Of a stretch of 64,000 bases of DNA, positions 8,461 through 64,000 are shown piece by piece. The notes under the pieces are model-generated. The model did no database searches, was not told the DNA's origin, and was given only the letters and a program-made list of their open reading frames with translations. The stretch's first letter is position 1, and every line of letters begins with the position of its first letter. A program made the position numbers and the translations under genes. The stretch is from Dendrobates tinctorius (lineage: Eukaryota). Location: positions 4,526,001 to 4,590,000 of the forward strand of contig NW_027361924.1 in NCBI RefSeq assembly GCF_039654945.1, read 5' to 3'.

Positions 8461-11400
8461 GCCCATATATACACAGAGCCTGTATAGACACACTGCCTAT
8501 ACACAGATAGCCCTATATACACACAGCCCATATATAGATAGCCCTATATACACACACAGCCGTATATATAGTGCTGTATACCTGAATCCCCCATGTACTC
8601 TCTATACTCCTCTATATACAGTGCTTTATACCCCATATACTAACCATACTCCTCTATATACAGTCCCGTATACCCCATATACTCACTATACTCCTCTATA
8701 TACAGTCCTGTATACCCCATATACTCACTATACTTCTATATACAGTCCTGTATACCCCATGTACTCACTATACTCCTCTATATACAGTCCTGTATACCCC
8801 ATATACTCACTATACCCCTCTATATACAGTCCTGTATACCCCATATACTCACTATACCCCTCTATATACAGTCCTGTATACCCCATATACTCACTATACT
8901 CCTCTATATACAGTCCTGTATACCCCATATACTCACTATACTTCTATATACAGTCCTGTATACCCCATGTACTCACTATACTCCTCTATATACAGTCCTG
9001 TATACCCCATATACTCACTGTACTCCTCTATATACAGTCCTGTATACCCCATATACTCATTATACTCCTCTATATACAGTCCTGTATACCCCATACACAC
9101 TATACTCCTCTATATACAGTGATGTATACACATATACTCACTATACTCTTCTATATACAGTGCTGTATACCCCATATACTCACTATACTCCTCTATATAC
9201 AGTCCTGTATACCCCATACACTCACTATACCCCTCTATATACAGTGCTGTATACCCCATATACTCACTATACCCCTCTATATACAGTCCTGTATACCCCA
9301 TATACTCACTATACTCCTCTATATACAGTCCTGTATACCCCATATACTCACTATACCCCTCTATATACAGTCGTGCATACCCCATAAACTCACTATACTC
9401 CTATATACAGTGCTGTATCCCCCATATACTCACTATACTCCTATATAACGTCCTGTATACCCCTTATACTCACTATACTCCTCTATATACAGTCCTGTAT
9501 ACCCCATGTACTCACTATACTCCTCTATATACAGTCCTGTATACCCCATGTACTCACTATACTCTTCTATATACAGTCCTGTATACCCCATATACTCACT
9601 ATACACAGTCCTGTATACCCCATATACTCACTATACTCTTCTATATACAGTCCTGTATACCCCATATACTCACTATATACAGTCCTATATACCCCATATA
9701 CTCACTATACTCCTCTATATACAGTGCTGTATACCCCCATGTACTCTCTATACCCCTCTATATACAGTGCTGTATACCCCAATGTACTCACTATACACCT
9801 CTATATACAGTGCTGTATCCCCCATATACTCACTATACTCCTATATACAGTGCTGTATCCCCCATATACTCACTATACTCCTCTATATACAGTGCTGTAT
9901 ACCCCATATACTCTCTGTACCCCTATATAGTGCTGTATACCCCATATACTCACTATACACCTCTATATACAGTGCTGTATCCCCATATACTCACTATACA
10001 CCTCTATATACAGTGCTGTATCCCCATATACTCACTATACACCTCTATATACAGTGCTGTCCATTACCTCATAGATTCTGTCACTGATAGCTGTGAGTTT
10101 GGACATTTCTCAAAAATTTTTTTTGCTTTTATGCAAAACGTTTGTCAGGAAAAAGAAGTGGCCGAGTGATTGTGACTGTGGTATATAAGGGCTACGTGTA
10201 TAATAATAATAGTAATTATCAGGGCGAAATGTCAGGAGGCCGCCATTTACCCGGGCGTGGTGTAGAGGTGCGGCCCCGGGCCAGAGCATGATGGTAATTC
10301 CAGGTAGATGACACAATTTCCTGAATTTCTTCCCGTTTACCTCTGGTGGGCCCGAAGGTAATACACAGATGATTTTTAAGGTGAACTTCGTCTTTAACAC
10401 TCCATTGACCGGTTGCATCCCCTCCATTAGGCTGTGCTCAGTATTTGGTCAGTATTTGACCTCAGTATTCGTAGCCAAAACCGGGAGAGGAACAATCAGG
10501 GGAAAAGTACAATAGAGACGCGTCACCACTTCTGGATTATCACCCACTCCTGGGTTTGGCTTCCGAATACTGAGGTAAAGTGCTGACCGAATACTGAGGT
10601 AAAATGCTGACCGAATACTGAGGTAAAATGCTGACCGAATACGGAGGTAAAATGCTGACCGAATACGGAGGTAAAATGCTGACCGAATACGGAGGTAAAA
10701 TGCTGACCGAATACGGAGGTAAAATGCTGACCGAATACGGAGGTAAAATGCTGACCGAATACGGAGGTAAAATGCTGACCGAATACGGAGGTAAAATGCT
10801 GACCGAATACGGAGGTAAAATGCTGACCGAATACGGAGGTAAAATGCTGACCGAATACGGAGGTAAAATGCTGACCGAATACGGAGGTAAAATGCTGACC
10901 GAATACGGAGGTAAAATGCTGACCGAATACGGAGGTAAAATGCTGACCGAATACTGAGGTAAAATGCTGACCGAATACCGTACTTGTACATTTAAAGGGC
11001 TTGTATCGCTTATTAGTCATCCTCAGGGCATAATGTGAGAGAACTGCGAATCTTCAGGACCGTTCTCACTGCAGAAACTTCAATTATGAAATTGTTTACG
11101 GTCCAATGTCACCGGTTTCCCTTTTACTTCCGCGTTGCATGCGGATTTTGGGCCGTTTTACCCATTTAACTTCTTCGTTACATGCAGATTTTTCCGTGTT
11201 ACATGCGGATCCTGTGGCAGATTTCTCCCTTTACTTCCATGTTACATGCAGATTTTGTGGTCGATTTCCTACTTTATTTCCGTGTTACATGCAGATTTAT
11301 TTTGCAGATTTCCTCCTTTTACTTCTGTGTTACATGCGGATTTTGGGCCATTTTCCCCCTTTACTTGTTATATGCAGATTTCCACCTTCCATGTTACATG

Positions 11401-14400
11401 CAGATTTTTGGGGGGCAGATTTCCCCCTTTTATTCCATGTTACCAGGGCTGTGGAGTCTGTAAGCCAAACCTGCGACTCCGACTCCTCAATTTCCCTTAC
11501 ACCGACTCCAACTCCACGACTCCCACACATATTGCTTATATTTAAGTGAAAAATTTATTGTAGTACAATGTGAACATCAGACATTTAATAATTTCTATGA
11601 TCCAATAATCAAGATATTTAGATAGAACATAATATCTATTTATTGGAATTCAACTTTAGAACACAAAAAACTGTAATAAATTGTAATCACGTAATACTGT
11701 ATAATATTGATTACATATATACAGTACAGACCAAAAGTTTGGACACACCTTCTCATTCAAAGAGTTTTCTTTATTTTCATGACTATGAAAATTGTAGATT
11801 CACTCTGAAGGCATCAATACTATGAATTACCACATGTGGAATTATATAATTAACAAAAAAGTGTGAAACAACTGAAAATATGTCTTATATTCTAGATTCT
11901 TCAAAGTAGCCACCTTTTGCTTTGATTACTGTTTTGCACACTCTTGGTATTCTCTTGATGAGCTTCAAGAGGTAGTCACCAGAAATGGTCTTCCAACAGT
12001 CCTGAAGGAGTTCCCAGAGATGCTTAGCACTTGTTGGCCCTTTTGCCTTCACTCTGCGGTCCAGCTCACCCCAAACCATCTCGATTGGGTTCAGGTCTGG
12101 TGACTGTGGAGGCCAGGTCATCTGGCGTAGCACCCCATCACTCTCCTTCATGGTCAAATAGCCCTTACACAGCCTGGAGGTGTGTTTGGGGTCATTGTCC
12201 TGTTGAAAAATAAATGATGGTCCAACTAAACGCAAACCGGATGGAATAGCATGCCGCTGCAAGATGCTGTGGTAGCCATGCTGGTTCAGTATGCCTTCAG
12301 TTTTGAATAAATCCCCAACAGTGTCACCAGCAAAGCACCCCCACACCATCACACCTCCTCCTCCATGCTTCACGGTGGGAATCAGGCATGTAGAGTCCAT
12401 CCATTCACCTTTTCTGCGTCGCACAAAGACACGGTGGTTGGAACCAAAGATCTCAAATTTGGACTCATCAGACCAAAGCACAGATTTCCACTGGTCTAAT
12501 GTCCATTCCTTGTGTTCTTTAGCCCAAACAATTCTCTTCTGCTTGTTGCCTGTCCTTAGCAGTGGTTTCCTAGCAGCTATTTTACCATGAAGGCCTGCTG
12601 CACAAAGTCTCCTCTTAACAGTTTTTGTAGAGATGTGTCTGCTGCTAGAACTCTGTGTGGCATTGACCTGGTCTCTAATCTGAGCTGCTGTTAACCTGCG
12701 ATTTCTGAGGCTGGTGACTCGGATGAACTTATCCTCCGCAGCAGAGGTGACTCTTGGTCTTCCTTTCCTGGAGCGGTCCTCATGTGAGCCAGTTTCTTTG
12801 TAGCGCTTGATGGTTTTTGCCACTGCACTTGGGGACACTTTCAAAGTTTTCCCAATTTTTGGGACTGACTGACCTTAATTTCTTAAAGTAATGATGGCCA
12901 CTCGTTTTTCTTTACTCAGCTGCTTTTTTCTTGCCACAATACAAATTCTAACAGTCTATTCAGTAGGACTATCAGCTGTGTATCCACCAGACTTCTGCAC
13001 AACACAACTGATGGTCCCAACCTCATTTATAAGGCAAGAAATTCCACTTATTAAACCTGACAGGGCACACCTGTGAAGTGAAAACCATTTCCAGTGACTA
13101 CCTCTTGAAGCTCATCAAGAGAATGCCAAGAGTGTGCAAAGAAGTAATCAAAGCAAAAGGTGGCTACTTTGAAGCACCTAGAATATAAGACATACAGTAT
13201 TTTCAGTTGTTTCACACTTTTGTTAATTATATAATTCCACATGTGTTAATTCATAGTTTCGATGCCTTCAGAGTGAATCCACAATTTTCATAGTCATGAA
13301 AGTAAAGAAAACGCTTTGAATGAGCAGGTGTGTCCAAGCATTTGGTCCGTACTGTATATATACTCACATACACACACACTATGACTTATCTCGGCTAAGA
13401 TAAAGCCTAGATCCTCAGGCTACATTCACACTATGGGCGTAGCCAGGATCAAACCTGGGGGGGGGCAGAACCTCATACTGCATACCTCAGCTGCTGCAGA
13501 ACCTCATACTGCACACCCCTAGACTTGAAAATAAAGCCTTCACCTTAAGAAGATGTGGTGAATGCAGGCTATTTATTCCAACTATCAGTTGATGCTACTG
13601 AAGACGAGCAATGCCTGTCCTGGGCGTCCTTTTGGGCAGCTATGAGGTGTACCTCACTGGTGCTAAAAAAAAGGAGTGTTAGTCGGTGTGCTACCCGGCT
13701 TTCATTCTTTTTGGTACAGATATGATATGGATACAGATATGGATAAATGGATAGAGCAGATTTCTAATCTGCTTTTGCTATTGAAAACATTATCTATGAG
13801 CTCAAAAACCTTTCAGGTGATGCGGTTTTTTAAAAAGCTGATCGGCTTTTGCAGCTGAAAAACGTATCCTCAAAAAACGCAGGAAAAACGCTGTGTGTGA
13901 ATGTAGCCTTAGATCAGGAATAGAACAGTCATTTATAGGACATTTCATAACTTTCCCAAATTCCTATGAAAAAATATTCAGCACATTCTGCATTGAACTA
14001 CTGTACCCAATTTATTATATATTTTAGGAGTCGGTCCATTTTATACCGACTCCACCAAAATGAGCTCCGCCCCCACAGCCCTGCATGTTACATTCGGTTT
14101 TTGTTGCAGATTTCCCCCTTTACTTCCATGTTGCATGCGGATTTTGTGGTTGATTTCACCCTTTCCCTCAGTGTTGCATGTAGATTTTGTTTGAGGTTTC
14201 CCCCTCTGTATCTCTGTTACATGCGGATTTTGTGGCGGATTTCCACCTTTCCCTCCGTGTTACATGCGGATTTTGTTGTGAACTTGTTGCAGATTTCACC
14301 CTTTGTGCTTTAAATTTGGATTTTCACTGGAGAAATTCGTAGCAAATGTGAATCAAAATCTGCAGAATCCCTCACTGTTCTCCGAGTCCTGACTTGTCAC

Positions 14401-43711: not shown

Positions 43712-46700
43712 TGTATATTACCGATACATCGCTCATTATCAGTCACAGACGCGTATATCACCGATACATCGCTCATTATCGGTCACAGACGCGTATATCA
43801 CCGATACATCGCTCATTATCAGTCACAGACGCGTATATCACCGATACATCGCTCATTATCAGTCACAGACGCGTATATCACCGATACGTCGCTCATTATC
43901 GGTCACAGACGCGTATATTACCGATACGTCGCTCATTATCGGTCACACGCGTATATTACCGATACGTCACTCCTTAGCAGTCACAGACGCGTACATTAAT
44001 GATATGTCACTCATTATCAATCACAGACGTGTATATTACCAATATGACGCTAATTATCGGTCACAGACGCGTATATCACCGATACGTCGCTCATTATCGG
44101 TCACACGCGTATATCACCGATACGTCGCTCATTATCGGTCACAGACGTGTATATTACCAATATGACGCTAATTATCGGTCACAGACGCGTATATCACCGA
44201 TACGTCGCTCATTATCGGTCACACGCGTATATCACCGATACGTCACTCCTTAGCAGTCACAGACGCGTACATTACTGATACGTCACTCATTATCAATCAC
44301 AGACGTGTATATTACCAATATGACGCTCATTATCGGTCACAGACGCGTATATCACCGATACGTCGCTCATTATCGGTCACACGCGTATATCACCGATACG
44401 TCGCTCATTATCGGTCACACGCGTATATCACCGATACGTCGCTCATTATCGGTCACACGCGTATATCACCGATACGTCGCTCATTATCGGTCACACGCGT
44501 ATATCACCGATACGTCGCTCATTATCGGTCACAGACGCGTATATTACCGATACGTCGCTCATTATCGGTCACACGCGTATATCACCGATACGTCGCTCGT
44601 TATCGGTCACACGCGTATATCACCGATACGTCGCTCGTTATCGGTCACAGACGCGTATATTACCGATACGTCGCTCATTATCGGTCACACGCGTATATCA
44701 CCGATACGTCGCTCGTTATCGGTCACACGCGTATATCACCGATACGTCGCTCGTTATCGGTCACAGACGCGTATATCACCGATACGTCGCTCGTTATCGG
44801 TCACACGCGTATATCACCGATACGTCGCTCGTTATCGGTCACACGCGTATATCACCGATACGTCGCTCATTATCGGTCACAGACGCGTATATCACCGATA
44901 CGTCGCTCGTTATCGGTCACACGCGTATATCACCGATACGTCGCTCGTTATCGGTCACACGCGTATATCACCGATACGTCGCTCGTTATCGGTCACAGAC
45001 GCGTATATTACCGATACGTCGCTCGTTATCGGTCACACGCGTATATCACCGATACGTCGCTCGTTATCGGTCACAGACGCGTATATCACCGATACGTCGC
45101 TCGTTATCGGTCACACGCGTATATCACCGATACGTCGCTCGTTATCGGTCACACGCGTATATCACCGATACGTCGCTCGTTATCGGTCACAGACGCGTAT
45201 ATTACTGATACGTCGCTCATTATCGGTCACACGCGTATATCACCGATACGTCGCTCGTTATCGGTCACACGCGTATATCACCGATACGTCGCTCGTTATC
45301 GGTCACAGACGCGTATATTACCGATACGTCGCTCGTTATCGGTCACACGCGTATATCACCGATACGTCGCTCGTTATCGGTCACAGACGCGTATATCACC
45401 GATACGTCGCTCGTTATCGGTCACACGCGTATATCACCGATACGTCGCTCGTTATCGGTCACACGCGTATATCACCGATACGTCGCTCGTTATCGGTCAC
45501 AGACGCGTATATTACCGATACGTCGCTCGTTATCGGTCACACGCGTATATTACCGATACGTCGCTCGTTATCGGTCACACGCGTATATCACCGATACGTC
45601 GCTCGTTATCGGTCACAGACGCGTATATTACTGATACGTCGCTCATTATCGGTCACAGACGCGTATATCACCGATACGTCGCTCATTATCGGTCACACGC
45701 GTATATTACCGATACGTCACTCCTTAGCAGTCACAGACGCGTACATTACTGATACGTCACTCATTATCAATCACAGATGTGTATATTACCAATATGACGC
45801 TCATTATCGGTCACAGACGCGTATATCACCGATACGTCGCTCATTATCGGTCACACGCGTATATCACCAATACGTCGCTCATTATCGGTCACACGCGTAT
45901 ATCACCGATACGTCGCTCATTATCGGTCACAGACGCGTATATTACCGATACGTCGCTCGTTATCGGTCACACGCGTATATCACCGATACGTCGCTCATTA
46001 TCGGTCACAGACGCGTATATCACCGATACGTCGCTCGTTATCGGTCACAGACGCGTATATTACCGATACGTCGCTCATTATCGGTCACACGCGTATATCA
46101 CCGATACGTCGCTCGTTATCGGTCACACGCGTATATCACCGATACGTCGCTCGTTATCGGTCACAGACGCGTATATTACCGATACGTCGCTCGTTATCGG
46201 TCACACGCGTATATCACCGATACGTCGCTCGTTATCGGTCACAGACGCGTATATCACCGATACGTCGCTCGTTATCGGTCACACGCGTATATCACCGATA
46301 CGTCGCTCGTTATCGGTCACACGCGTATATCACCGATACGTCGCTCGTTATCGGTCACAGACGCGTATATTACTGATACGTCGCTCATTATCGGTCACAC
46401 GCGTATATCACCGATACGTCGCTCGTTATCGGTCACACGCGTATATCACCGATACGTCGCTCGTTATCGGTCACAGACGCGTATATTACCGATACGTCGC
46501 TCGTTATCGGTCACACGCGTATATCACTGATACGTCGCTCGTTATCGGTCACAGACGCGTATATCACCGATACGTCGCTCGTTATCGGTCACAGACGCGT
46601 ATATCACCGATACGTCGCTCATTATCGGTCACACGCGTATATCACCGATACGTCGCTCGTTATCGGTCACACGCGTATATCACCGATACGTCGCTCGTTA

Positions 46701-48540
46701 TCGGTCACAGACGTGTATATCACCGATACGTCGCTCGTTATCGGTCACACGCGTATATCACCGATACGTCGCTCGTTATCGGTCACACGCGTATATCACC
46801 GATACGTCGCTCGTTATCGGTCACAGACGCGTATATCACCGATACGTCGCTCGTTATCGGTCACAGACGCGTATATCACCGATACGTCGCTCATTATCGG
46901 TCACAGACGCGTATATCACCGATAAATCGCTCGTTATCGGTCACAGACGCGTATATCACCGATAAATCGCTCGTTATCGGTCACACGCGTATATCACCGA
47001 TACGTCGCTCGTTATCGGTCACAGACGCGTATATCACCGATACGTCGCTCGTTATCGGTCACAGACGCGTTTATCACCGATACGTCGCTCGTTATCGGTC
47101 ACAGACGCGTATATCACCGATAAATCGCTCATTATCGGTCACAGACGCGTTTATCACCGATACGTCGCTCGTTATCGGTCACAGACGCGTATATCACCGA
47201 TAAATCGCTCATTATCGGTCACAGACGCGTATATCACCGATAAATCGCTCATTATCGGTCACGGACGCGTTTATCACCGATACGTCGCTCGTTATCGGTC
47301 ACAGACGCGTATATCACCGATAAATCGCTCGTTATCGGTCACAGACGCGTATATCACCGATAAATCGCTCGTTATCGGTCACAGACGCGTTTATCACCGA
47401 TACGTCGCTCGTTATCGGTCACAGACGCGTATATCACCGATAAATCGCTCATTATCGGTCACGGACGCGTTTATCACCGATACGTCACTCGTTATCGGTC
47501 ACAGACGCGTATATCACCGATAAATCGCTCATTATCGGTCACAGACGCGTTTATCACCGATACGTCGCTCGTTATCGGTCACAGACGCGTATATCACCGA
47601 TAAATCGCTCATTATCGGTCACAGACGCGTATATCACCGATAAATCGCTCATTATCGGTCACGGACGCGTATATCACCGATAAATCGCTCATTATCGGTC
47701 ACGGACGCGTATATCACCGATAAATCGCTCATCGGTCACGGACGCGTATATCACCGATACATCGCTCATTATCGGTCACAGACGCGTATATCACCGATAA
47801 ATCGCTCGTTATCGGTCACAGACGCGTATATCACCGATAAATCGCTCGTTATCGGTCACAGACGCGTTTATCACCGATACGTCGCTCGTTATCGGTCACA
47901 GACGCGTATATCACCGATAAATCGCTCATTATCGGTCACGGACGCGTTTATCACCGATACGTCACTCGTTATCGGTCACAGACGCGTATATCACCGATAA
48001 ATCGCTCATTATCGGTCACAGACGCGTTTATCACCGATACGTCGCTCGTTATCGGTCACAGACGCGTATATCACCGATAAATCGCTCATTATCGGTCACA
48101 GACGCGTATATCACCGATAAATCGCTCATTATCGGTCACAGACGCGTATATCACCGATAAATCGCTCATTATCGGTCACGGACGCGTATATCACCGATAA
48201 ATCGCTCATCGGTCACGGACGCGTATATCACCGATACATCGCTCATTATCGGTCACAGACGCGTATATCACCAATAAATCGCTCATTATCGGTCACAGAC
48301 GCGTATATCACCGATAAATCGCTCATTATCGGTCACGGACGCGTATATCACCGATACATCGCTCATTATCGGTCACAGACGCGTATATCACCGATAAATC
48401 GCTCATTATCGGTCACGGTCGCGTATATTACAGATTTGTCGCTAATTATCGGTCACAGACGCGTATATTATCGATATTCATAGATAATTATCATTCACAG
48501 CTAATTATCATTCACAGACGTGTATATCACGAATACATCG
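43712..48540. repeat. 4.8-kb CpG-rich 38/40-bp minisatellite (ACCGATACGTCGCTCRTTATCGGTCAC(AG)ACGCGTATATC), ~120 copies
   Basis: Visible period; internal inverted repeat ACCGATA/TATCGGT. Confidence 0.97.
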
Positions 48541-53663: not shown

Positions 53664-54804
53664 TTCTGTGAAATCAAACCGTCCACTTAGGAAGCAACAC
53701 TGATTGACAATCAACTTCACATGCTGTTGTGCAAATGGAATAAACAGATGGAAATTATTGGCAATTATCAAGACACCCTCAATAAAGGAGTGGTTCTGCA
53801 GGTGGGGACCACAGACCACATCTCAGTACCAATGCTTTCTGGCTGATGAGGATGATCTGAGGGCCCAAAGTCCACAGATGGGGATTGTACTCACAGACCA
53901 ACACCGTGCACGACGCTTAGCATTTGCCACAGAACACCAGAATTGGCAAATTCGCCATTGGCGCCCTGTGCTCTTCACAGATGAAAGCAGGTTCACACTG
54001 AGCTCATGTGACAGACGTGACTGGAGATGCCATGGAGAGGGATCTGCTGCCTGCAACATCCTTCAGCATGACCAGTTTGGCAGTGGGTCGGTAATGGTGC
54101 GGGGTGGCATTCCTTTGGAGGGCCGCATGGTGTTAGGCTGTGAGCACAACCCCCATCTGTGGACGTCGGGCACTCAGACCATCCTCATGCAGTCAGTTTC
54201 TAACCATTTGTGCAGACACATGCACATTTGTGGCCTGCTGGAGGTCATTTTGCAGAGCTCTGGCAGTGCTCCTCCTGTTCCTCCTTGCACAAAGGCTGAG
54301 GTAGCGGTCCTGCTGCTGGGTTGTTGCCCTCCTACGGCCCCCTCCACGTCTCCTGGTGTACTGGCCTGTCTCCTGGTAGCGCCTCCAGCCTCTGGACACT
54401 ACTCTGACAGACACAGCAAACCTTCTTGCCACAGCTCACATTGATGTGCCATCCTGGATGAGCTGCACTACCTGAGCCACTTGTGTGGGTTGTAGAGTCT
54501 GTCTCATGCTACCACGAGTGTGAAAGCACAACCAACATTCAAAAGTGACCAAAACATCAGCCAGAAAGCATTGGTACTGAGATGTGGTCTGTGGTCCCCA
54601 CCTGCAGGACCACTCCTTTACTGAGGGTGTCTTGATAATTGCCAATAATTTCCATCTGTTGTCTATTCCATTTGCACAACAGCATGTGAAATTGATTGTC
54701 AATCAGTGTTGCTTCCTAAGTGGACAGTTTGATTTCACAGAAGTTTGATTTACTTGGAGTTATATTCTGTTGTTTAAGTGTTGACTTTATTTTTTTGAGC
54801 AGTG
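53664..54804. mobile_element. Rearranged non-autonomous Tc1-like element
   Basis: Inverted repeats ~53664-53845 and ~54557-54742; terminus ...TTTTGAGCAGTG|TA; HTH half on minus strand, VLFTDESRF half on plus strand. Confidence 0.85.
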
Positions 54805-55213
54805 TATATTATATGTCTCTATTGGCCTCTTGCAATGTGAGGGTTAACAAGCTGTCTGAACCTGCTGTATAAAGCCTCTGCTTTCAGTGCAGAGCAGAGG
54901 GGGAGTCCAGGATATTATGGGAGGAAGGAGGCTGGCACTGAATATGGGGGGAGGTGGCTGGGTGCTGGGGGTGTACTGGGCAGAGCCGGCACATTTCGGT
55001 GCCTCCTCCTGCTTCTGTTAGCTTCAAGCAGCTACAGTTTGCCTGAACTTCCTTGGTGCTTGTTGTAGTCGATAATATGGGGGGGCTTTTATATTAGACC
55101 CCCACTTTTACCTGCGACTTGTCAATTGCAAAGACTTCTATGGGAATAATGCCCATGCCTGGTAGCTTACAGAAATCCTAAGGACCTTTCCTAGAAGAAG
55201 CAGGACACCAAGT

Positions 55214-55325
55214 ATGGAGATGAACAGCACTGCGTTTGACGAGAGCTCCTTGGACCACCTGGACCCCTCTCTGTCTCTACACGAGAGCAGTGAGATTGAC
55301 ACCGCCTTGCTGAGCGACATAGATG
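55214..55325 (+). CDS. SREBF1: SREBF1 exon 1a (start ATG 55214 or 55220)
   Basis: MEMNSTAFDESSLDHLDPSLSLHESSEIDTALLSDID, GATG|gtaggt phase-1 donor. Confidence 0.9.
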
Positions 55326-58300
55326 GTAGGTGACCCCCTGTGGCAAGCGTCATTGACAGGTGGCAACCCAGAGAGCGGAGCGCTGTGGCATCCCTGTGGT
55401 CTCTTGTTGTATTCTCTACCAGGTTGAACCAACGCGTTTTGAGCCATTTGCTATTTTAGCCGCACGACTTTCTCTTCCTATCCGAAATATCGGGTTCATT
55501 TCCATCGACTTCTATGGAGGGCAACTGTCGGTTAGGTAACGTTAAATTTGCATGTTTCGCCACGCATTATAGCGCTGACGCGTTTCAGGGCACCGCAAAA
55601 GTGTTGCTACCTGGGCTCATCATGGCGACTAAGGAGGGCAAAACTAGTTGTACATTCGCTCTGTCGAAGCTTGTAGTTCGCTGCGGGGGCATTTTTGGGA
55701 CTTACGGAACAATGGAGGGTCAGAGGGTTCTGGGGCAAAGGGTGTATTTCTGGTTGTTTCATAGGGTTCGCCATGTGCCTATGTGGATTCCTAGTAGCTT
55801 CCTAGGGTTGCTGGCTGCGCTTCCTCCCCTTACGTGACGTCACGCAGGGTTACTGTCGGTCACTGTTCTAGTGCTGAGCTGTTTGTCAGCAGTGCTGTGA
55901 ACGCAGTCGCCCGGGGCCGCGAAACAACGGGGGTCATAGTGATTCCCCTATAATAATTATTCATGTTTTTATGTAATCGTCCATGGAGAACAGTCAAGAG
56001 AAATGTTAATTTCTGTGACCCCCGTAGCGTCAGAATAATCTCATTTTGGTATACCGTAAATTAAAAATTCTGTAGACATCTTACATTTTGGGGTCGTTTC
56101 CTATTAAAACACATATTTCCTGCCCACGGGGGAAAAATAATGGCGTCGGTATAATTCCTCAGGACTAATAATACGATAGAAGGCAAATGCCTGAAAAAAA
56201 AAGAAATAAGCAAAATGGGGGCTGTCATGGCGGAAGGCTGTCCACCCTCATTCCCGCCATTCACCTACGTTCCCTATATATATACCCTACATGACAGCCC
56301 CCATTTCACTCTTCACCGAATTCATGTGGTCCAGTTCCTGTGTCGGATGTCGCCAATCGTATGGCGGTGACATTAATGAACGCAAATAGCGATCTGGTGA
56401 ATTATTGGAAATTTTTGGAAATAGATCTGATATATCCATATAGAATCTGACGGACTCGGCATGGGGGAGCAAAATGGAGCCCTATAGATGTCCCACAAAG
56501 TATTTAGAGGGGGTGGGAACATATTTTGGGGGGGTAATTTGAAAGAGGTGTACTAAGAAAATTGTGGGTTTTTTAAACAATTCTGTGGTAAAAAATGTTA
56601 ATTTTCAATGATTTTTGTTTTAGTTATTTGCATTTTTGGGGGAAAGTTGTGTGACGGCCAATATGGCCGCCAAGTCACCTGAGTGACGGCACATGTGAGA
56701 ACCGTGTTCCTGGATCCACAATCAATGTTTTTTTTTTCAGTATTTGGAGCCTACGGTTCTTTTATGGTTCGGTTCAGTCAGTTTGTGCTGATTCGGGAGG
56801 TTTTGGCCGCACAATGCCCCCATGTTTATCTCGGGTACACATCACAAAGGGTAGGCCGAGCTCGCCCCTCCCAGGAGAACCTTCCAGAGGGGCTTTATCT
56901 CGCTGTGGAATTGTAAACATGGCGTATGTGGAAAGTCCTGAGAAGCAAAAGAGCTCAAATTGGTGTCAAGGTATGGCGGTACTATTATCGCCCCTTTGGG
57001 TCTCGGTGTAAAATCGGCACCCGTCAAGTGACTGCTGCCCTTATATGTGAAGGAGAAGGCCTTGATCATCGGATTGGGGGGGTCCCCAGAAAGGACAAAT
57101 GGGGGTGAGTAAAAAAAAACAAAAAAAACGTCAAACTGGCTGAGAATGAACGGTTCACTTCCGTTAACTGTTACTTTCTGTGAAAGTTGGGTCATAACTC
57201 ATATGGCTGCCCCTGTGGTTACCTCTGATTTTTGCCTCCTGACCCAATTTCATAAATTCTTTCCTAATCGGGTCACTCGGCACCGTCTGTGCCCCATATA
57301 GTCAAAATAAATATTTAGCAGCTAAAATGGTGGAAAGCAAATATCAGGGCACTGTCGACCACAGCGGGGTCAGACTAGTAGGGCGCTGACCTCCGCTTCT
57401 CTGAATATTGCGCGTTCTCGCTATATACCCGTGGTGGAGAGCTGGATTTTGTCATTTAAAGGGATACTTCCCATTTAGTAGAGAGTCCACCGCCACCTAG
57501 TATTAGACTCTGCAGTTTTAAATTGGGATACCGCCAGTGGCAAGAATTGTAAAGAAAAGTAAAGTTGGAAGGTAGGGAATGTTCTAGCCGAATATATAAA
57601 CTTGCATATATTTTTAAGCAGATCTCTTAGATCTGATGAAGCCGGTATACTTGCAATGAAAAAAAAAACCTCCCACTTTAGAATGGCTGTTTAAGGCTAT
57701 GTTCACACATTGTGTTATGGATTTAATTGCAGATCTGGCTGCGGATTTCACCCTTCTCCATTTCTAAGGGTTGAGTCGGGTGAAACCCGAAATGAAAACC
57801 CGCTTCGTGCTTTCATTTTCAGAATTTATTTTTTTTTAATGGAAAGGTTGAAAGGGATTTTGAAAAACCCATTTGTTTGTATCGTACTGCAAATGGATGT
57901 AGATTCTGCATCGTGTGAACTGGGCCTAACACTTATTGAACGTCTTTCTGCCTGATATTGAAATGAGCATTTTTTTTTTTCAGGACTTTCATAGTAAGTA
58001 CACCAGTCTCATCAGGTTTTAAAGGATTGGTCTAATAATGTAATACCGCTTCTGGTGTCAGATCCGTTTTGTACGCTATAGCACTCAGGAATTCGGCGTT
58101 GTGAGCCAGTCTCGTAATGTCAGTGACACCGCGCAACCGCGTGGCCTTTTCTTGCGCAATTCTTGTATGTAGGTGACTTGTAGGCCTGTGAATGTCCTAT
58201 AATAACCCGACACTCCGCTGAACGCTAGTAACCTTCAGAGACAAGGCTGGTTCCTCCTCAGTCGATGGCCAGCCTGGGCTGCTGCTTCCATCTTTCGCTG

Positions 58301-61300
58301 ATTGGCCCTCCACAGTCACCTCATCTCACAGCTCTGATTCATTCTCCTTTCCCCATCAACTCCATCCACAAGAGGTGGAGCCGCTTCACGAAAAGGAGGA
58401 GGAAGAGGAGGGTGTGGGAAAAATGAAAAAAGAAAAAAAAAAAGCAATAGTCAAATGCACAGGACTCCTCCACACAGACCTTACAGGTGGAGCAGCATTT
58501 AGTGAAGCATCTCTTAGGTGTCTGCAAAGGGGAGCCTGGCTCTTCCCCGCTTCTCCAGCCCATGGAGTGCACTTTTGAAGGTACAGAATAGTCTAGAAAG
58601 TCTTTTTTGAAGTTTTACATTTAAAAAAAAATATATAATAATAATAAAAAAAAATTAGAAATGCCGTAATATGTAAAAATATATATAATTTTGCTTATAC
58701 AAACATGTCAATGAGGTATACCGTGTAAAGATTTATTATTATACTTTATCTTACGATGTGCTTTATGCTTATTATAGTCATTTATGCTCCATTTTATTCC
58801 TAGGCTACTTAATATAACTGAGTGCGTGCAACTTATACATGGATGGAAATATTCTATATGTCATCAATGTACATAGTTCTGACCTGGATACAAGGACTTG
58901 GCTACAGTGGGTGCAGAGATAGTAGTCACACACGATCACCGGCTACAGTGGGTGCAGAGATAGTAGTTACACATGATCACCGGCTACAGTGGGTGCAGAG
59001 ATAGTAGTCACACATGATCACCGGCTACAGTGGGTGCAGAGATAGTAGTCACACATGGTCACAGGCTACAGTGGGTGCAGAGACAGTAGTCACACATGAT
59101 CACTGGCTACAGTGGGTGCAGAGATAGTAGTCACACATGGTCACCGGCTACAGTGGGTGCAGAGATAGTAGTCACACACGGTCACCGGCTACAGTGGGTG
59201 CAGAGATAGTAGTTACACATGATCACTGGCTACAGTGGGTGCAGAGATAGTAGTCACACATGATCACCGGCTACAGTGGGTGCAGAGATAGTAGTCACAC
59301 ATGGTCACAGGCTACAGTGGGTGCAGAGATAGTAGTCACACATGGTCACAGGCTACAGTGGGTGCAGAGACAGTAGTCACACATGATCACCGGCTACAGT
59401 GGGTGCAGAGATAGTAGTCACACATGATCACCGGCTACAGTGGGTGCAGAGATAGTAGTCACACATGGTCACAGGCTACAGTGGGTGCAGAGACAGTAGT
59501 CACACATGATCACTGGCTACAGTGGGTGCAGAGATAGTAGTCACACATGGTCACCGGCTACAGTGGGTGCAGAGATAGTAGTCACACACGGTCACCGGCT
59601 ACAGTGGGTGCAGAGATAGTAGTCACACATGATCACTGGCTACAGTGGGTGCAGAGATAGTAGTCACACATGGACACTGGCTACAGTGGGTGCAGAGATA
59701 GTAGTTACACATGATCACCGGCTACAGTGGGTGCAGAGATAGTAGTCACACATGATCACCGGCTACAGTGGGTGCAGAGATAGTAGTCACACATGATCAC
59801 CGGCTACAGTGGGGGCAGAGATAGTAGTCACACATGGTCACCGGCTACAGTGGGTGCAGCGATAGTAGTCACACATGATCACCGGCTACAGTGGGTGCAG
59901 GGATAGTAGTCACGCACGATCACCGGCTACAGTGGGTGCAGAGATAGTAGTCACACATGGACACTGGCTACAGTGGGTGCAGAGATAGTAGTCACACATG
60001 ATCACCGGCTACAGTGGGGGCAGAGATAGTAGTCACACATGATCACCGGCTACAGTGGGTGCAGAGATAGTAGTCACACATGATCACCGGCTACAGTGGG
60101 TGCAGAGATAGTAGTCACACACGGTCACCGGCTACAGTGGGTGCAGAGATAGTAGTCACACACGATCACTGGCTACAGTGGGTGCAGAGATAGTAGTCAC
60201 ACATGGACACTGGCTACAGTGGGTGCAGAGATAGTAGCCACACATGATCACTGGCTACAGTGGGTGCAGAGATAGTAGTCACACATGATCACCGGCTACA
60301 GTGGGTGCAGAGATAGTAGTCACACATGATCACCGGCTACAGTGGGGGCAGAGATAGTAGTCACACATGGTCACCGGCTACAGTGGGTGCAGCGATAGTA
60401 GTCACACATGATCACCGGCTACAGTGGGTGCAGGGATAGTAGTCACGCACGATCACCGGCTACAGTGGGTGCAGAGATAGTAGTCACACATGGTCACCGG
60501 CTACAGTGGGGGCAGAGATAGTAGTCACACATGATCACCGGCTACAGTGGGTGCAGAGATAGTAGTCACACATGATCACCGGCTACAGTGGGTGCAGAGA
60601 TAGTAGTCACACACGGTCACCGGCTACAGTGGGTGCAGAGATAGTAGTCACACACGATCACCGGCTACAGTGGGTGCAGAGATAGTAGTCACACACGATC
60701 ACCGGCTACAGTGGGTGCAGGGATAGTAGTCACACACGATCACTGGCTACAGTGGGTGCAGAGATAGTAGTCACACACGGTCACCGGCTACAGTGGGTGC
60801 AGAGATAGTAGTCACACACGATCACCGGCTACAGTGGGTGCAGAGACAGTAGTCACACACGATCACCGGCTACAGTGGGTGCAGAGACAGTAGTCACACA
60901 CGGTCACCGGCTACAGTGGGTGCAGAGATAGTAGTCACACACGGTCACCGGCTACAGTGGGTGCAGAGATAGTAGTCACACACGGTCACCGGCTACAGTG
61001 GGTGCAGAGATAGTAGTCACACACGATCACTGGCTACAGTGGGTGCAGGGATAGTAGTCACACACGATCACCGGCTACAGTGGGTGCAGAGATAGCAGTC
61101 ACACATGATCACCGGCTACAGTGGGTGCAGAGATAGTAGTCACACATGATCACCGGCTACAGTGGGTGCAGAGATAGTAGTCACACATGATCACCGGCTA
61201 CAGTGGGTGCAGGGATAGTAGTCACACATGATCACCGGCTACAGTGGGTGCAGAGATAGTAGTCACACATGATCACCGGCTACAGTGGGTGCAGAGATAG

Positions 61301-63995
61301 TAGTCACACATGGTCACAGGCTACAGTGGGTGCAGAGATAGTAGTCACACATGATCACCGGCTACAGTGGGTGCAGAGATAGTAGTCACACATGGTCACA
61401 GGCTACAGTGGGTGCAGAGATAGTAGTCACACATGATCACCGGCTACAGTGGGGGCAGAGATAGTAGTTACACATGATCACCGGCTACAGTGGGTGCAGA
61501 GATAGTAGTCACACATGGTCACAGGCTACAGTGGGTGCAGAGATAGTAGTCACACATGATCACCGGCTACAATGGGTGCAGAGATAGTAGTCACACATGA
61601 TCACCGGCTACAGTGGGTGCAGAGATAGTAGTCACACATGGTCACAGGCTACAGTGGGTGCAGAGATAGTAGTCACACATGGTCACAGGCTACAGTGGGT
61701 GCAGAGATAGTAGTCACACATGGTCACAGGCTACAGTGGGTGCAGAGATAGTAGTCACACATGGTCACAGGCTACAGTGGGTGCAGAGATAGTAGTCACA
61801 CATGGTCACAGGCTACAGTGGGTGCAGAGATAGTAGTCACACATGATCACCGGCTACAATGGGTGCAGAGATAGTAGTCACACATGATCACCGGCTACAG
61901 TGGGTGCAGAGATAGTAGTCACTCATGGTCACAGGCTACAGTGGGTGCAGGGATAGTAGTCACACATGATCACCGGCTACAGTGGGTGCAGAGATAGTAG
62001 TCACACATGATCACCGGCTACAGTGGGTGCAGAGATAGTAGTCACACATGATCATTAATTACAGTGGATACAAAATTAGTACTTGCACCCAATCCCCGGC
62101 TGCAGTGGGTGCAGAGGTAGTCGCACCCAATTCCCGGCTGCAGTGGGTGCAGAGGTAGTCGCACCCAATCCCCGGCTGCAGTGCGTGCAGAGGTAGTCGC
62201 ACCCAATTCCCGGCTGCAGTGGGTGCAGAGGTAGTCGCACCCAATCCCCGGCTGCAGTGCGTGCAGAGGTAGTCGCACCCAATTCCCGGCTGCAGTGGGT
62301 GCAGAGGTAGTCGCACCCAATCCCCGGCTGCAGTGGGTGCAGAGGTAGTCGCACCCAATTCCCGGCTGCAGTGGGTGCAGAGGTAGTCGCACCCAATCCC
62401 CGGCTGCAGTGGGGTGCCGAGTACTTGTACCCATTATTGCCTCATGGTAGTTGGGGTTCTTGTTACAGATTTTTCTGTAGGGCACCAGAACTTCAAGGTT
62501 CTGCCTCTTTCTGGATATAAGAGATTTTATTGACTTGATCCTTTCATAAAAGATATTTTGACCTCAACATATTCTATACACATTTTATAATCCCTCTTTT
62601 CCTTGCTGGGGAAACACAATCACTCTCCTGACAGTAAAACCACAAACAGACAGAAAGATTAGTGTTTTTTTTTTCTTTTCATAGCAACCAACCAGATTCC
62701 AGTTCTCATTTTAAAATTGCTAGTTTGGAAATGACACCTGTGTTCTGATTGGTTGCTATGGGTAGCTACTCTGGTAGTCTGGTTTAGGTTTTGACACAAG
62801 GCCGCAATGTATTATTATAGTGTTTACTTTACCATCCGTTGTCCAGAATTGCTACTTTCTCTCTATTCCATGATTGTAAGCGCGCAAACAGCCATCTCTG
62901 TGGTAAAATAAGTCAGATGGTTGTGTCTATGGCCAGTACTCTTCCTTTCCTACAAAATGGCTGCCGGGATATATGGAATCTGCTGTCAATTCAGGCATTT
63001 CTATTTTTCTCTCTAGATATGCTTCAGCTCATCCACAATCAAGACAATGACTTCTCCGGGTTTTTTGATAGTCCCTTTGGGCCGGTCAGCACTCCTAGCC
63101 AGGACGGTGCCCCTAATGTGGACCTTGCTGGCGGCGCAGCACTCAGCTCCCTGGAGGGATTACTGGCGGCGCCCACAAACTCAACCCCCATGAAGTTGTT
63201 CCCTCATTCAGTACCCAGTTCCCAAAGTCCGTCTATTGCGCCCCAACCGCAGGACAATCTCGCACAGCAGCTGAAGCTTGGGGTACAAAGTTTGGCCAAG
63301 GATGAGCCCATGCAGACCTGCCCCTCTACACCGCACGCTCAGAGCAAAGTGCAAGCGGCACCGGTGCCACAGCCAATGCAGGGCATGACGTTCGGGAAGA
63401 ACTTGGTGCAGCCTCAGTATAACACCCAGCCGGTGACTGGATATGCAGGTAATCATGGAGGTAGCCTGCTGCAGGAAAAAACGAGATCAATGAGGCTTCC
63501 TCCATGACTGATAAAGCGTTTTATTTTGCTGCAGCGCAAAGTCCTCCGTCTCAGCCGCCGCTGCAGACCGTTGCCAGTCAATCCTTGCAAAGTGTTGTAA
63601 GCCAGCCTGTTCAGACTGTGGTGACCCAGGCCCCGGTCCTGCCGACTGTGGCAGCGCAACCACTGCAGACGCCCTGTACGCCCCATATCACGCAACCCCT
63701 CACCATCCACACTCAGAGTCTATCTCCCCAATTCCTGACCACCACCGCCAGTACGGCTTCCATAACCTCACAAATCCAGCAGGTTCCAGTAAGTGAGTCT
63801 TCTCATCCCCCCCCATGCTCCCATTGATGGTGGTCCGACAGTGCATATTACTACTAATATGACTTCTTTTGACAGGTTCTCCTCCAGCCTCATTTCATCA
63901 AAGCCGAGTCTCTGCTGCTTACTGCTGTGAAGACGGACGCAACGGGGATGAAAACCACACCGACCACCATACAGACCACCCCACTGCAAATGCCG
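55214..63995 (+). CDS. SREBF1: Sterol regulatory element-binding protein 1, 5' part; exons 1a 55214-55325 (or 1c 58562-58580), 63017-63448, 63535-63788, 63876-63995
   Basis: SEIDTALLSDID|DMLQLIHNQDNDFSGFFD acidic activation domain; SQIQQVP|VLLQPHFIKAESLLLT; synteny with TOM1L2. Confidence 0.95.
55833..55862 (+). promoter_or_regulatory. CRE palindrome adjacent to a DR4/LXRE-like element
   Basis: CGTGACGTCACG (55833-55844) then GGGTTA-ctgt-CGGTCA (55847-55862). Confidence 0.65.
58152..58324 (+). promoter_or_regulatory. SREBP-1c-type promoter: C/EBP site, two DR4 LXREs, inverted CCAAT, SRE-like site
   Basis: TTGCGCAA 58152; TGTCCT-ataa-TAACCC 58193-58208; TGAACG-ctag-TAACCT 58219-58234; CTGATTGGCC ~58298; GTCACCTCAT 58315-58324. 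Confidence 0.8.
58562..58580 (+). CDS. SREBF1: SREBF1 alternative first exon 1c (MECTFE)
   Basis: CCATGGAGTGCACTTTTGAAG|gtacag; phase-1 donor joins exon 2 in frame; mammalian 1c begins MDCTFEDMLQLI. Confidence 0.88.
58900..62050. repeat. 41-bp minisatellite (GGCTACAGTGGGTGCAGAGATAGTAGTCACACATGATCACC), ~77 copies
   Basis: 41-bp period. Confidence 0.97.
62085..62415. repeat. Related 38-bp minisatellite, ~8 copies
   Basis: GGCTGCAGTGGGTGCAGAGGTAGTCGCACCCAATYCCC. Confidence 0.93.
63017..63448 (+). CDS. SREBF1: SREBF1 exon 2
   Basis: ctctag|ATATG... GCAG|gtaatc (an in-phase alternative GT lies 12 nt downstream). Confidence 0.92.
63535..63788 (+). CDS. SREBF1: SREBF1 exon 3
   Basis: gctgcag|CG ... 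QIQQVP|gtaagt. Confidence 0.9.
63876..63995 (+). CDS. SREBF1: SREBF1 exon 4
   Basis: gacag|VLLQPHFIKAESLLLTAVKTD...TTPLQMP|gtgcg (donor at window edge, less certain). Confidence 0.88.
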
Positions 63996-64000
63996 GTGCG

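What the first reader, a model, noticed from the sequence alone, without database searches (positions are those of the whole stretch)
58152..58586. A mammalian-style SREBP-1c first exon and lipogenic promoter in an apparent amphibian genome
Seen: a 19-nt coding mini-exon ATG GAG TGC ACT TTT GAA G|gt (MECTFE), absent from the ORF track, lies between exon 1a and exon 2 and splices in frame to DMLQLI. About 240-410 bp upstream, in order, are a C/EBP palindrome, two tandem DR4 elements, an inverted CCAAT and an SRE-like site. Known: mammalian SREBP-1c starts MDCTFEDMLQLI and its promoter has two LXREs followed by an NF-Y/SRE complex. The 1a/1c split is usually discussed as mammalian. Inference: the isoform and its LXR/SREBP feed-forward circuit date to the tetrapod ancestor. 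I cannot check whether existing frog annotations already include it.
Basis: partly seen in the sequence, partly recalled or inferred. Interest (0 to 1): 0.8.

Follow-up and report, generated by a model that had tools for sequence, protein, structure and literature searches.

The report
Frog SREBP-1c first exon and promoter
The short exon and the binding-site cluster are the poison-frog counterpart of the mammalian SREBP-1c start exon and its promoter; they are real and strongly conserved, but the isoform is already in public annotation of this species and of many other vertebrates.

Summary
ATGGAGTGCACTTTTGAAG|GT lies at 58562-58582, between SREBF1 exon 1a (CDS 55214-55325) and exon 2 (from 63017). 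It reads in frame as MECTFE-DMLQLI.

The window is Dendrobates tinctorius. Its exon 1a and exon 2 peptides are identical to RefSeq isoforms X1 and X2 of that species. Isoform X2 (XP_073414597.1) already starts MECTFEDMLQLI, so the exon is not new.

The same start is annotated in Xenopus, Rana, Bufo, Bombina, Discoglossus, a salamander (MDCTFE), several birds, spotted gar (MDCTLE) and a skate (MDCLFE).

New here at DNA level: in four frog families the only alignable parts of intron 1 are the DR4/CCAAT/SRE block and the mini-exon, apart from one further block near exon 1a in one family. Gar and skate carry the same module, with ATTGG-N10-TCACCTCAT at fixed spacing 222-282 bp before the ATG. The module therefore appears to predate tetrapods.

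Not shown: I saw no 58580->63017 junction read. RNA contigs also run across the presumed promoter (58008-58531), so the transcription start is unsettled. Binding by LXR, NF-Y or SREBP is inferred only.

The parts
55214..55325 (+). SREBF1 exon 1a coding part: 37 codons plus 1 base (MEMNSTAFDESSLDHLDPSLSLHESSEIDTALLSDID), with the donor gt at 55326.
   Evidence: It is 100% identical to residues 1-37 of D. tinctorius isoform X1. RNA contigs 55024/55043-55325 continue directly into exon 2 letters.
58152..58159 (.). C/EBP-type palindrome TTGCGCAA.
   Evidence: It is kept in Ranitomeya, is TTGCACAA in Gastrophryne, and is not kept in Pelodytes. This is the weakest of the claimed sites.
58193..58208 (-). 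DR4-1, an LXRE-like site. It reads TGTCCTATAATAACCC on the + strand, which is GGGTTAttatAGGACA on the - strand.
   Evidence: It is identical or nearly identical in Ranitomeya and Gastrophryne and partly kept in Pelodytes. It resembles gar TGCCCGATAGTAACCC and skate TGTCCGATAGTAACCT.
58219..58234 (-). DR4-2, an LXRE-like site. It reads TGAACGCTAGTAACCT on the + strand, which is AGGTTActagCGTTCA on the - strand.
   Evidence: about 0 matches expected by chance. TGAAC....AGTAACCTT is invariant in 4 frog families. It matches 13 of 16 bases of the published mammalian LXR-binding oligo core TGACCGCCAGTAACCC (PMC3909891).
58243..58254 (+). Conserved block AAGGCTGGTTCC; the factor that binds it is unknown.
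   Evidence: AGGCTGGTTC is invariant in 4 frog families.
58301..58324 (+). Inverted CCAAT (ATTGG, 58301-58305), a 10-nt spacer, then the SRE-like site TCACCTCAT (58316-58324). This is a putative NF-Y/SREBP composite.
   Evidence: It occurs once in the window, against 0 in 100 shuffles. The same composite with the same spacing occurs once in each of the 3 other frog loci, gar and skate. It always lies 222-282 bp upstream of the 1c ATG.
58330..58341 (+). Conserved block AGCTCTGATTCA, just 3' of the SRE-like site.
   Evidence: It is nearly invariant in 4 frog families and is not kept in gar or skate.
58380..58561 (+). Inferred 5' UTR of exon 1c, including a purine-rich tract at about 58385-58445 and upstream ATGs at 58423 and 58455. 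The position of the start is inferred, not measured.
   Evidence: The Phyllobates terribilis X3 model translates the homologue of 58475-58579. RNA contigs cover 58008-58531. Upstream ATGs were listed.
58562..58580 (+). Exon 1c coding part, ATGGAGTGCACTTTTGAAG (MECTFE plus the first base of the Asp codon). The donor GT is at 58581-58582.
   Evidence: The DNA is identical in Ranitomeya and Gastrophryne. Pelodytes has MEFTFE. The product equals the N-terminus of XP_073414597.1.
58900..62421 (.). A 41-bp tandem array (about 86 copies) that fills most of the intron between exon 1c and exon 2.
   Evidence: Ranitomeya shares it at L001 13760-15761.
63017..63449 (+). SREBF1 exon 2, starting (D)MLQLIHNQDNDF, shared by both isoforms.
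   Evidence: Its peptide matches D. tinctorius isoform X2 at 143 of 143 residues.

Best explanation
This is the 5' end of the Dendrobates tinctorius SREBF1 gene. It has two alternative first exons.

Exon 1a supplies a 37-residue acidic N-terminus. The 19-nt coding part of exon 1c supplies only MECTFE. Both splice in phase 1 to exon 2 (DMLQLI...). The 1c product is therefore the short-activation-domain isoform, orthologous to mammalian SREBP-1c.

The conserved block 58190-58345, 220-370 bp upstream of the 1c ATG, is the orthologue of the mammalian 1c promoter. It holds two DR4 sites of the TGNNCG-NNAG-TAACCY type for LXR/RXR, followed by an NF-Y site and an SRE at a fixed 10-nt spacing for SREBP auto-activation. 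Transcription most likely starts a few tens of bases 3' of the SRE.

Shown: the sequence, the reading frame, orthology, purifying selection on each element, and that the isoform is annotated. Inferred: factor binding, the transcription start, and liver or nutritional regulation.
For: Exon and frame:
- Searches give the sequence, coordinates and in-frame translation.

Species and annotated isoform:
- Exon 2 is 143/143 and exon 1a 37/37 identical to D. tinctorius isoforms X2 and X1.
- X2 (XP_073414597.1) starts MECTFEDMLQLI.

The same N-terminus is annotated elsewhere:
- Eight further frog genera.
- Xenopus, Rana, Lithobates, Bufo and Pleurodeles.
- Six birds.
- Gar and skate.

DNA conservation:
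- Between the window and Pelodytes or Gastrophryne, blastn aligns only four things across the 5' flank and intron 1: exon 1a, the promoter core, the mini-exon, and one further block near exon 1a in Gastrophryne.
- The 4-frog alignment shows invariant DR4-2, ATTGG, CAGTCACCTCATCTC and mini-exon plus GGTACA.
- ATTGG-N10-TCACCTCAT occurs exactly once in every frog, gar and skate locus.
- Gar has TGACCGCGAGTAACCCC and TGCCCGATAGTAACCCC upstream of it. The first matches 15 of 16 bases of the published LXR-binding core (PMC3909891).

Transcription:
- RNA-derived contigs from three runs and at least two related organisms cover 58008-58531. Their depth is 7.2, 2.7 and 7.7, while the rest of the intron is near zero.
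Against: - No read or contig joining 58580 to 63017 was seen. The RNA contigs stop at 58529-58531, 30 nt before the ATG.
- Those contigs also run colinear with the genome across the whole presumed promoter (58008-58386). This is not expected if transcription starts only 3' of the SRE.
- A start upstream of 58423 puts two or more upstream ATGs in the leader.
- The C/EBP palindrome is not kept in Pelodytes.
- DR4-1 has a weak AGGACA half-site.
- RefSeq X isoforms are computed models, not cloned cDNAs.
Confidence: 0.88

Rival explanations
1. The conserved block 58150-58345 is not the core promoter of exon 1c. It would instead be an intronic enhancer, or part of a long exon 1c leader, with the real start at or before about 58008, near the high-copy repeat at 57983-58019. 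The DR4/CCAAT/SRE cluster would then act from inside the transcribed region.
For: RNA contigs in X1, X2 and X3 run unbroken from 58008, 58029 and 58025 through the DR4s, CCAAT and SRE. No transcription start was measured.
Against: - The SRE-to-ATG distance is held at 222-282 bp from skate to frog, as expected of a proximal promoter with a leader of about 150-200 nt.
- Contig depth is one mean per contig, so low-level read-through cannot be told from exon-level signal.
- The contigs begin at a repeat, where assembly graphs break.
- A start at 58008 would put seven upstream ATGs in the leader.
- In mammals the orthologous cluster is the promoter (literature cited).
Confidence: 0.12
2. The mini-exon is a conserved sequence relic that is no longer used as a first exon in D. 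tinctorius. On this view the RefSeq isoform is a homology-driven model.
For: No junction read was obtained. In the one frog cluster with Logan members (Rana/Lithobates), the four full-length transcript-derived proteins are all 1a-type.
Against: - The ATG, all six codons and the GGTACA donor are invariant over four frog families, while the surrounding intron is unalignable. This indicates selection on coding and splicing.
- The region is covered by RNA contigs above intron background.
- The same isoform is modelled independently in more than 15 species.
Confidence: 0.04
3. The motif cluster is a chance collection of short transcription-factor consensus matches.
For: Single short motifs such as ATTGG or TTGCGCAA are common in any sequence.
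Against: The composite patterns give about 0 matches in shuffles. They are conserved in position, order and spacing in six species.
Confidence: 0.01

Closest known systems
Mammalian SREBF1 exon 1c / SREBP-1c isoform (MDCTFEDMLQLI...)
   Same: - An alternative first exon lying between exon 1a and exon 2.
- Six codons plus one base, with a phase-1 donor.
- The same residues except D2E.
- It replaces the long acidic 1a N-terminus.
Pleurodeles even has MDCTFE.
   Different: Glu replaces Asp at residue 2 in frogs and birds. Expression pattern, insulin/LXR inducibility and weak-activator behaviour are untested outside mammals.
Mammalian SREBP-1c promoter (two LXREs plus an NF-Y/SRE complex; LXR-alpha-C/EBP-beta complex at the LXREs)
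   Same: - Two DR4s of the TGxxCG-xxAG-TAACCy type, on the strand opposite to transcription.
- A CCAAT box and an SRE follow them, in the same order.
- The published LXR-binding oligo CAGTGACCGCCAGTAACCCCAGC (PMC3909891) matches frog DR4-2 at 13 of 16 bases and gar at 15 of 16.
- C/EBP-beta involvement is known in rodents (PMC6023608).
   Different: - The frog half-sites are more degenerate (AGGACA, CGTTCA).
- I could not compare spacing with mammals, because no mammalian locus was fetched.
- The frog C/EBP palindrome is a separate DNA site 35 bp 5' of DR4-1 and is only partly conserved.
- No Sp1 box was found by my motif scan.
RefSeq model XP_073414597.1, SREBP1 isoform X2 [Dendrobates tinctorius]
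   Same: It is the identical product: MECTFE followed by the exon 2 peptide, 143/143 residues.
   Different: It is a protein-level computed annotation. It says nothing about the promoter elements.

Membership tests
SREBF1 exon 1c (SREBP-1c first exon) | Lies in the intron between exon 1a and exon 2 of SREBF1, on the same strand. | tested here: met
   Exon 1a is at 55214-55325, the mini-exon at 58562-58580 and exon 2 at 63017.
SREBF1 exon 1c (SREBP-1c first exon) | Encodes M-[D/E]-C-T-F-E plus one base, with a GT donor, in frame with DMLQLI of exon 2. | tested here: met
   The translation is MECTFEDMLQLIHNQDNDF.
SREBF1 exon 1c (SREBP-1c first exon) | Is actually spliced to exon 2 in mRNA of this species. 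| tested here: inconclusive
   No 58580->63017 joint was seen. The stretch I laid ended at 58899 and the RNA contigs stop at 58531. RefSeq X2 has this product, but it is a computed model.
SREBF1 exon 1c (SREBP-1c first exon) | Orthologous conservation of the exon in related species. | tested here: met
   The DNA is identical in Ranitomeya and Gastrophryne and gives MEFTFE in Pelodytes. Gar has MDCTLE and skate MDCLFE.
SREBP-1c promoter (LXRE pair plus NF-Y/SRE) | Two DR4 LXR response elements upstream of the start. | tested here: met
   The sequences are present at 58193-58208 and 58219-58234 and are conserved. They match the published oligo. Binding was not tested.
SREBP-1c promoter (LXRE pair plus NF-Y/SRE) | A CCAAT (NF-Y) site next to an SRE, proximal to the start. 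| tested here: met
   ATTGG-N10-TCACCTCAT is at 58301-58324 and is unique and conserved in 6 species.
SREBP-1c promoter (LXRE pair plus NF-Y/SRE) | The transcription start lies just 3' of the SRE complex. | tested here: inconclusive
   RNA contigs cover both sides of the cluster. No data on 5' ends were available.
SREBP-1c promoter (LXRE pair plus NF-Y/SRE) | Induction by LXR agonist, insulin and SREBP, with liver or adipose enrichment. | not testable with these tools
   This needs reporter, ChIP or tissue RNA-seq experiments.

The most novel reading that the evidence does not exclude
The whole SREBP-1c module was already present in the common ancestor of jawed vertebrates. The module is the six-codon first exon, LXRE-type DR4s, and an NF-Y site and SRE at a fixed 10-nt spacing about 230-280 bp before the ATG. 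It was later lost or remodelled in some lineages: no 1c-type isoform was seen in the sampled teleost clusters, and the parrot locus has neither the exon nor the module.

A second, separate GC-box/CRE/DR4 module sits about 0.3-1.7 kb 3' of exon 1a in frogs, a parrot and gar. This would give SREBF1 two ancient LXR inputs.

The fish literature states that only one SREBP-1 form exists, so the LXR-to-SREBP-1c lipogenic switch would be far older than it is usually described.
Probability: 0.7. Interest if true: 0.5.

Novelty: already known. Interest (0 to 1): 0.3.

Why it matters
For the frog the result is ordinary. The isoform is already in RefSeq for this species, and for Xenopus under the accession XP_002935887.

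The comparative by-product has some value. The 1c exon and its LXRE/NF-Y/SRE promoter are conserved from skate and gar to frogs. This contradicts the working assumption in fish and poultry lipid-metabolism papers that the 1a/1c split is a mammalian feature.

It also gives a ready set of natural promoter variants for testing how LXR and SREBP auto-regulation of lipogenesis evolved. These include frog half-site changes, the single clear DR4 in skate, and the loss in parrot.

Tried and rejected
Reads:
- Read laying was placed on 54900-58899 to avoid the 41-bp tandem array. It therefore could not show the acceptor side, and the RNA contigs ended 30 nt short of the ATG. This gives no verdict on the junction.

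Protein searches:
- The search of protein representatives with exon 2 gave only one true hit.
- The search for homologous proteins with exon 2 alone found only a partial Nanorana 1a-type protein. No transcript fragment starting MECTFE turned up.

Locus look-ups:
- The look-up of encoding contigs failed for 1c-type or non-longest isoforms. No bird locus holding the 1c exon could be fetched, and no mammalian or teleost locus was fetched either, so spacing against mammals rests on one published oligo.
- The parrot locus L004 has no 1c exon, even with 3 mismatches allowed, and no ATTGG-N10-TCACCTCAT.

Other checks:
- Rfam found nothing in 54000-64000.
- The repeat search around the site found only A-rich low-complexity matches.

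Literature:
- Searches found no paper describing a non-mammalian 1c exon or promoter. Searches were badly chosen and uninformative.
- PMC1134689 (rat promoter analysis) is not held.

Rejected readings:
- Chance motif matches and a transposon origin are rejected, because the block is conserved across frog families while the flanks are not.
Full report
**What is in the sequence**

The + strand of 54-64 kb holds the 5' end of a vertebrate SREBF1 gene.

- Exon 1a has its ATG at 55214 and ends at 55325. It encodes MEMNSTAFDESSLDHLDPSLSLHESSEIDTALLSDID plus one base, followed by gt.
- Exon 2 begins at 63017 after an AG and reads (D)MLQLIHNQDNDF... to 63449.
- Between them, at 58562-58580, lies ATGGAGTGCACTTTTGAAG followed by GTACAG. 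Joined to exon 2 it gives MECTFEDMLQLI.
- A degenerate pattern for M-[D/E]-C-T-F-E plus GGT occurs once in the window. It occurs in none of 100 shuffles, even with two mismatches allowed.

| Site | Sequence | Coordinates |
|---|---|---|
| C/EBP palindrome | TTGCGCAA | 58152-58159 |
| DR4-1 | TGTCCTATAATAACCC | 58193-58208 |
| DR4-2 | TGAACGCTAGTAACCT | 58219-58234 |
| Inverted CCAAT | ATTGG | 58301-58305 |
| SRE-like site | TCACCTCAT | 58316-58324 |

**Whose genome, and is the exon already annotated**

A search of the exon 2 peptide led to a full-length frog SREBP1. From there I reached about 60 vertebrate SREBP1 clusters that carry NCBI names.

[quoted passage not shown] Exon 1a matches isoform X1 of the same species at 37 of 37. 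The window is therefore the dyeing poison frog or something indistinguishable from it.

Isoform X2 begins MECTFEDMLQLI.

The same start is annotated in many other species:

- Frogs: Eleutherodactylus, Dendropsophus, Phyllobates, Pseudophryne, Mixophyes, Bombina and Discoglossus. Also Xenopus tropicalis (XP_002935887) and X. laevis, Rana temporaria, Lithobates pipiens, Bufo bufo and B. gargarizans.
- Salamander: Pleurodeles waltl, with MDCTFE as in mammals.
- Birds: six species.
- Fish: spotted gar with MDCTLE and thorny skate with MDCLFE.

**Conservation of the exon and promoter at DNA level**

I fetched six SREBF1 loci. Results for the mini-exon, always between exon 1a and exon 2:

| Species (locus) | Mini-exon |
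|---|---|
| Ranitomeya (L001) | identical DNA |
| Gastrophryne (L003) | identical DNA |
| Pelodytes (L002) | MEFTFE |
| Alligator gar (L005) | MDCTLE + G\|gt |
| Thorny skate (L006) | MDCLFE + G\|gt |
| Parrot, Pezoporus (L004) | not found |

Between the window and the distant frogs, blastn aligns only four things in 9 kb of flank and intron 1. These are exon 1a, the promoter core (58186-58407 against Gastrophryne, 58291-58341 against Pelodytes), the mini-exon, and one further block near exon 1a in Gastrophryne.

The four-frog alignment has invariant runs exactly at the following places:

- DR4-2 (TGAAC....AGTAACCTT).
- Most of DR4-1.
- An unassigned AGGCTGGTTC block.
- GATTGG.
- CAGTCACCTCATCTC.
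- The mini-exon plus GGTACA.

The composite ATTGG-N10-TCACCTCAT occurs exactly once in the window, against 0 in shuffles. It occurs once in each frog, gar and skate locus, always 222-282 bp before the 1c ATG.

Gar has two DR4s 5' of the composite, TGACCGCGAGTAACCCC and TGCCCGATAGTAACCCC. Skate has TGTCCGATAGTAACCT, with a weaker TGAACTTTATTAACAG beside it. An LXR-binding oligo from the mammalian SREBP-1c promoter, printed in PMC3909891, is CAGTGACCGCCAGTAACCCCAGC. The gar site matches its core at 15 of 16 bases and frog DR4-2 at 13 of 16.

The C/EBP palindrome is kept only in the three neobatrachian frogs, as TTGCGCAA or TTGCACAA. It is the least secure element. In rodents C/EBP-beta acts in a complex with LXR-alpha at the LXRE region (PMC6023608).

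**RNA evidence**

Three runs (X1 and X2 of one organism about 99% identical to the window, X3 of another about 96% identical) are RNA. Each has a contig that runs from 55024-55043 to 55325 and then continues with ATATGCTTCA..., which is exon 2.

The same runs each have a contig colinear with the genome from 58008, 58029 or 58025 to 58531, 58529 or 58386. Depths are 7.2, 2.7 and 7.7, against 39.9, 12.7 and 18.2 for the 1a mRNA contig. The rest of intron 1 is essentially uncovered.

So the 1c region is transcribed above intron background. Two things remain open:

- The contigs stop 30 nt before the ATG. A related DNA run has a G>A difference at 58531, which may break the assembly there. I therefore saw no 58580->63017 junction.
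- The contigs cover the presumed promoter itself, which is unexpected for a start 3' of the SRE. They begin at a high-copy 35-nt repeat (57983-58019), where assembly graphs break, and depth is a single mean per contig. Weak read-through therefore cannot be separated from exon signal.

The Phyllobates X3 model translates the homologue of 58475-58579, so the leader is at least about 90-130 nt long.

**Mechanism**

Shown:
- There are two first exons in the same phase.
- The 1a exon gives 37 residues, 10 of them acidic. The 1c exon gives 6 residues, 2 of them acidic.
- A block under strong purifying selection carries LXRE-type DR4s and a fixed-spacing CCAAT/SRE pair at a conserved distance from the 1c ATG.

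Inferred from established knowledge of mammalian SREBP-1c:
- LXR/RXR binds the DR4s.
- NF-Y and nuclear SREBP bind the CCAAT/SRE pair, giving feed-forward auto-activation.
- Transcription starts a few tens of bases 3' of the SRE.
- The product is a weaker, lipogenesis-biased activator.

**Comparison with what is known, and novelty**

The exon and promoter are orthologues of the mammalian SREBP-1c exon and promoter. At the level of annotation this is already known, so I rate the finding 'already known'.

I found no paper that describes a non-mammalian 1c exon or its promoter. A 2017 fish paper states that only a single SREBP-1 form had been characterised in fish and that it resembles 1a (PMC5220380). 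Frog papers measure srebp1 without separating isoforms.

The modestly new point is the depth of conservation. In contrast, no 1c-type isoform appeared in the teleost clusters I sampled, and none in parrots. That is absence of annotation, not proof of loss.

**Seen in passing**

A third LXRE-like DR4 lies about 520 bp 3' of exon 1a. It reads GGGTTACTGTCGGTCA at 55847-55862 on the + strand. A perfect CRE palindrome, TGACGTCA, precedes it at 55835-55842.

The composite of GC box, GTGACGTCAC and GGGTTACTnnCGGTCA is conserved in all four frogs, in the parrot (which lacks the 1c module) and in gar, but not in skate. I do not know whether it is described in mammals.

Noticed in passing
window 55820-55862; L001 10640, L002 10993, L003 11691, L004 10591, L005 10384: A second conserved regulatory module lies about 0.3-1.7 kb 3' of exon 1a. 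It consists of a GC box, a perfect CRE palindrome TGACGTCA (55835-55842) and an LXRE-type DR4 GGGTTACTGTCGGTCA (55847-55862, opposite orientation to the 1c-promoter DR4s). It is kept in four frogs, in a parrot that lacks the 1c exon, and in gar, but not in skate.
   Followed up: partly
window 58008-58531: RNA-run contigs from three runs run colinear with the genome across the presumed 1c promoter and stop 30 nt before the ATG. The rest of intron 1 is nearly uncovered. This may be an upstream start, read-through or an antisense transcript; it is unresolved.
   Followed up: partly
window 57983-58019: A roughly 35-nt piece (GACTTTCATAGTAAGTACACCAGTCTCATCAGG...) is high-copy. Depth is about 400 in the DNA run, and many contigs have unrelated letters on both sides, including contigs in the RNA runs. 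It is probably a fragment of a dispersed repeat.
   Followed up: no
window 58900-62421 and 43713-48476: There are two large tandem arrays: a 41-bp unit with about 86 copies in the intron between exon 1c and exon 2, and a 40-bp unit with about 121 copies upstream of SREBF1. Ranitomeya shares the 41-bp array at the same intron position.
   Followed up: partly
window 53704-54702: ORFs on opposite strands begin with the same peptide (MTINFTCCCANGI..RWKLLAIIKTPS.KEW.CRWGPQTTSQYQCFLAD). This looks like the two inverted ends of a decayed DNA-transposon copy, about 0.3-0.5 kb upstream of the 1a transcript start.
   Followed up: no
L004 (Pezoporus flaviventris) 10107-12467: Intron 1 of parrot SREBF1 (2.3 kb, no Ns) has no 1c-type mini-exon and no ATTGG-N10-TCACCTCAT. 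None of the listed parrot proteins starts with the 1c-type N-terminus; they are 1a-type, begin at DMLQLI or are fragments. Songbirds, a crane and owls do have MECTFE isoforms. This may be a lineage loss.
   Followed up: partly
proteins P0123, P0126, P0163, P0103: Some teleost and frog RefSeq isoforms use other first exons. Puntigrus X2 and Cyprinus X2 start at the exon 2 Met (MLQLI/MLQFI). Colossoma X3 starts MAEDLLIKY-MLQLI and Lithobates X5 starts MYSLTIDLD-MLQLI. No M[DE]C..E isoform appeared in the sampled teleost clusters.
   Followed up: no
L002 14351-14371 (Pelodytes ibericus): The 1c mini-exon reads ATGGAGTTTACTTTTGAAGGT, giving MEFTFE. The otherwise invariant Cys is replaced by Phe.
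   Followed up: no
P0016 (Phyllobates terribilis isoform X3) vs window 58475-58579: This RefSeq model starts at an upstream in-frame ATG and translates the 1c leader (…LQVEQHLVKHLLGCLQR…VPMECTFE). In D. tinctorius the corresponding ATG at 58455 is out of frame and gives a 15-codon upstream ORF. The extension is therefore probably an annotation artefact, not a conserved N-terminus.
   Followed up: partly
L004 1-912, L005 1-2831; L002 33199-38963, L006 55414-63060: The gene order is kept in parts of the series. A VHS/GAT gene (TOM1L2-like) lies upstream of SREBF1 in parrot and gar. A large zf-HC5HC2H gene (RAI1-like) lies downstream on the opposite strand in Pelodytes and skate; parrot and gar have a large unassigned gene in that position.
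   Followed up: no
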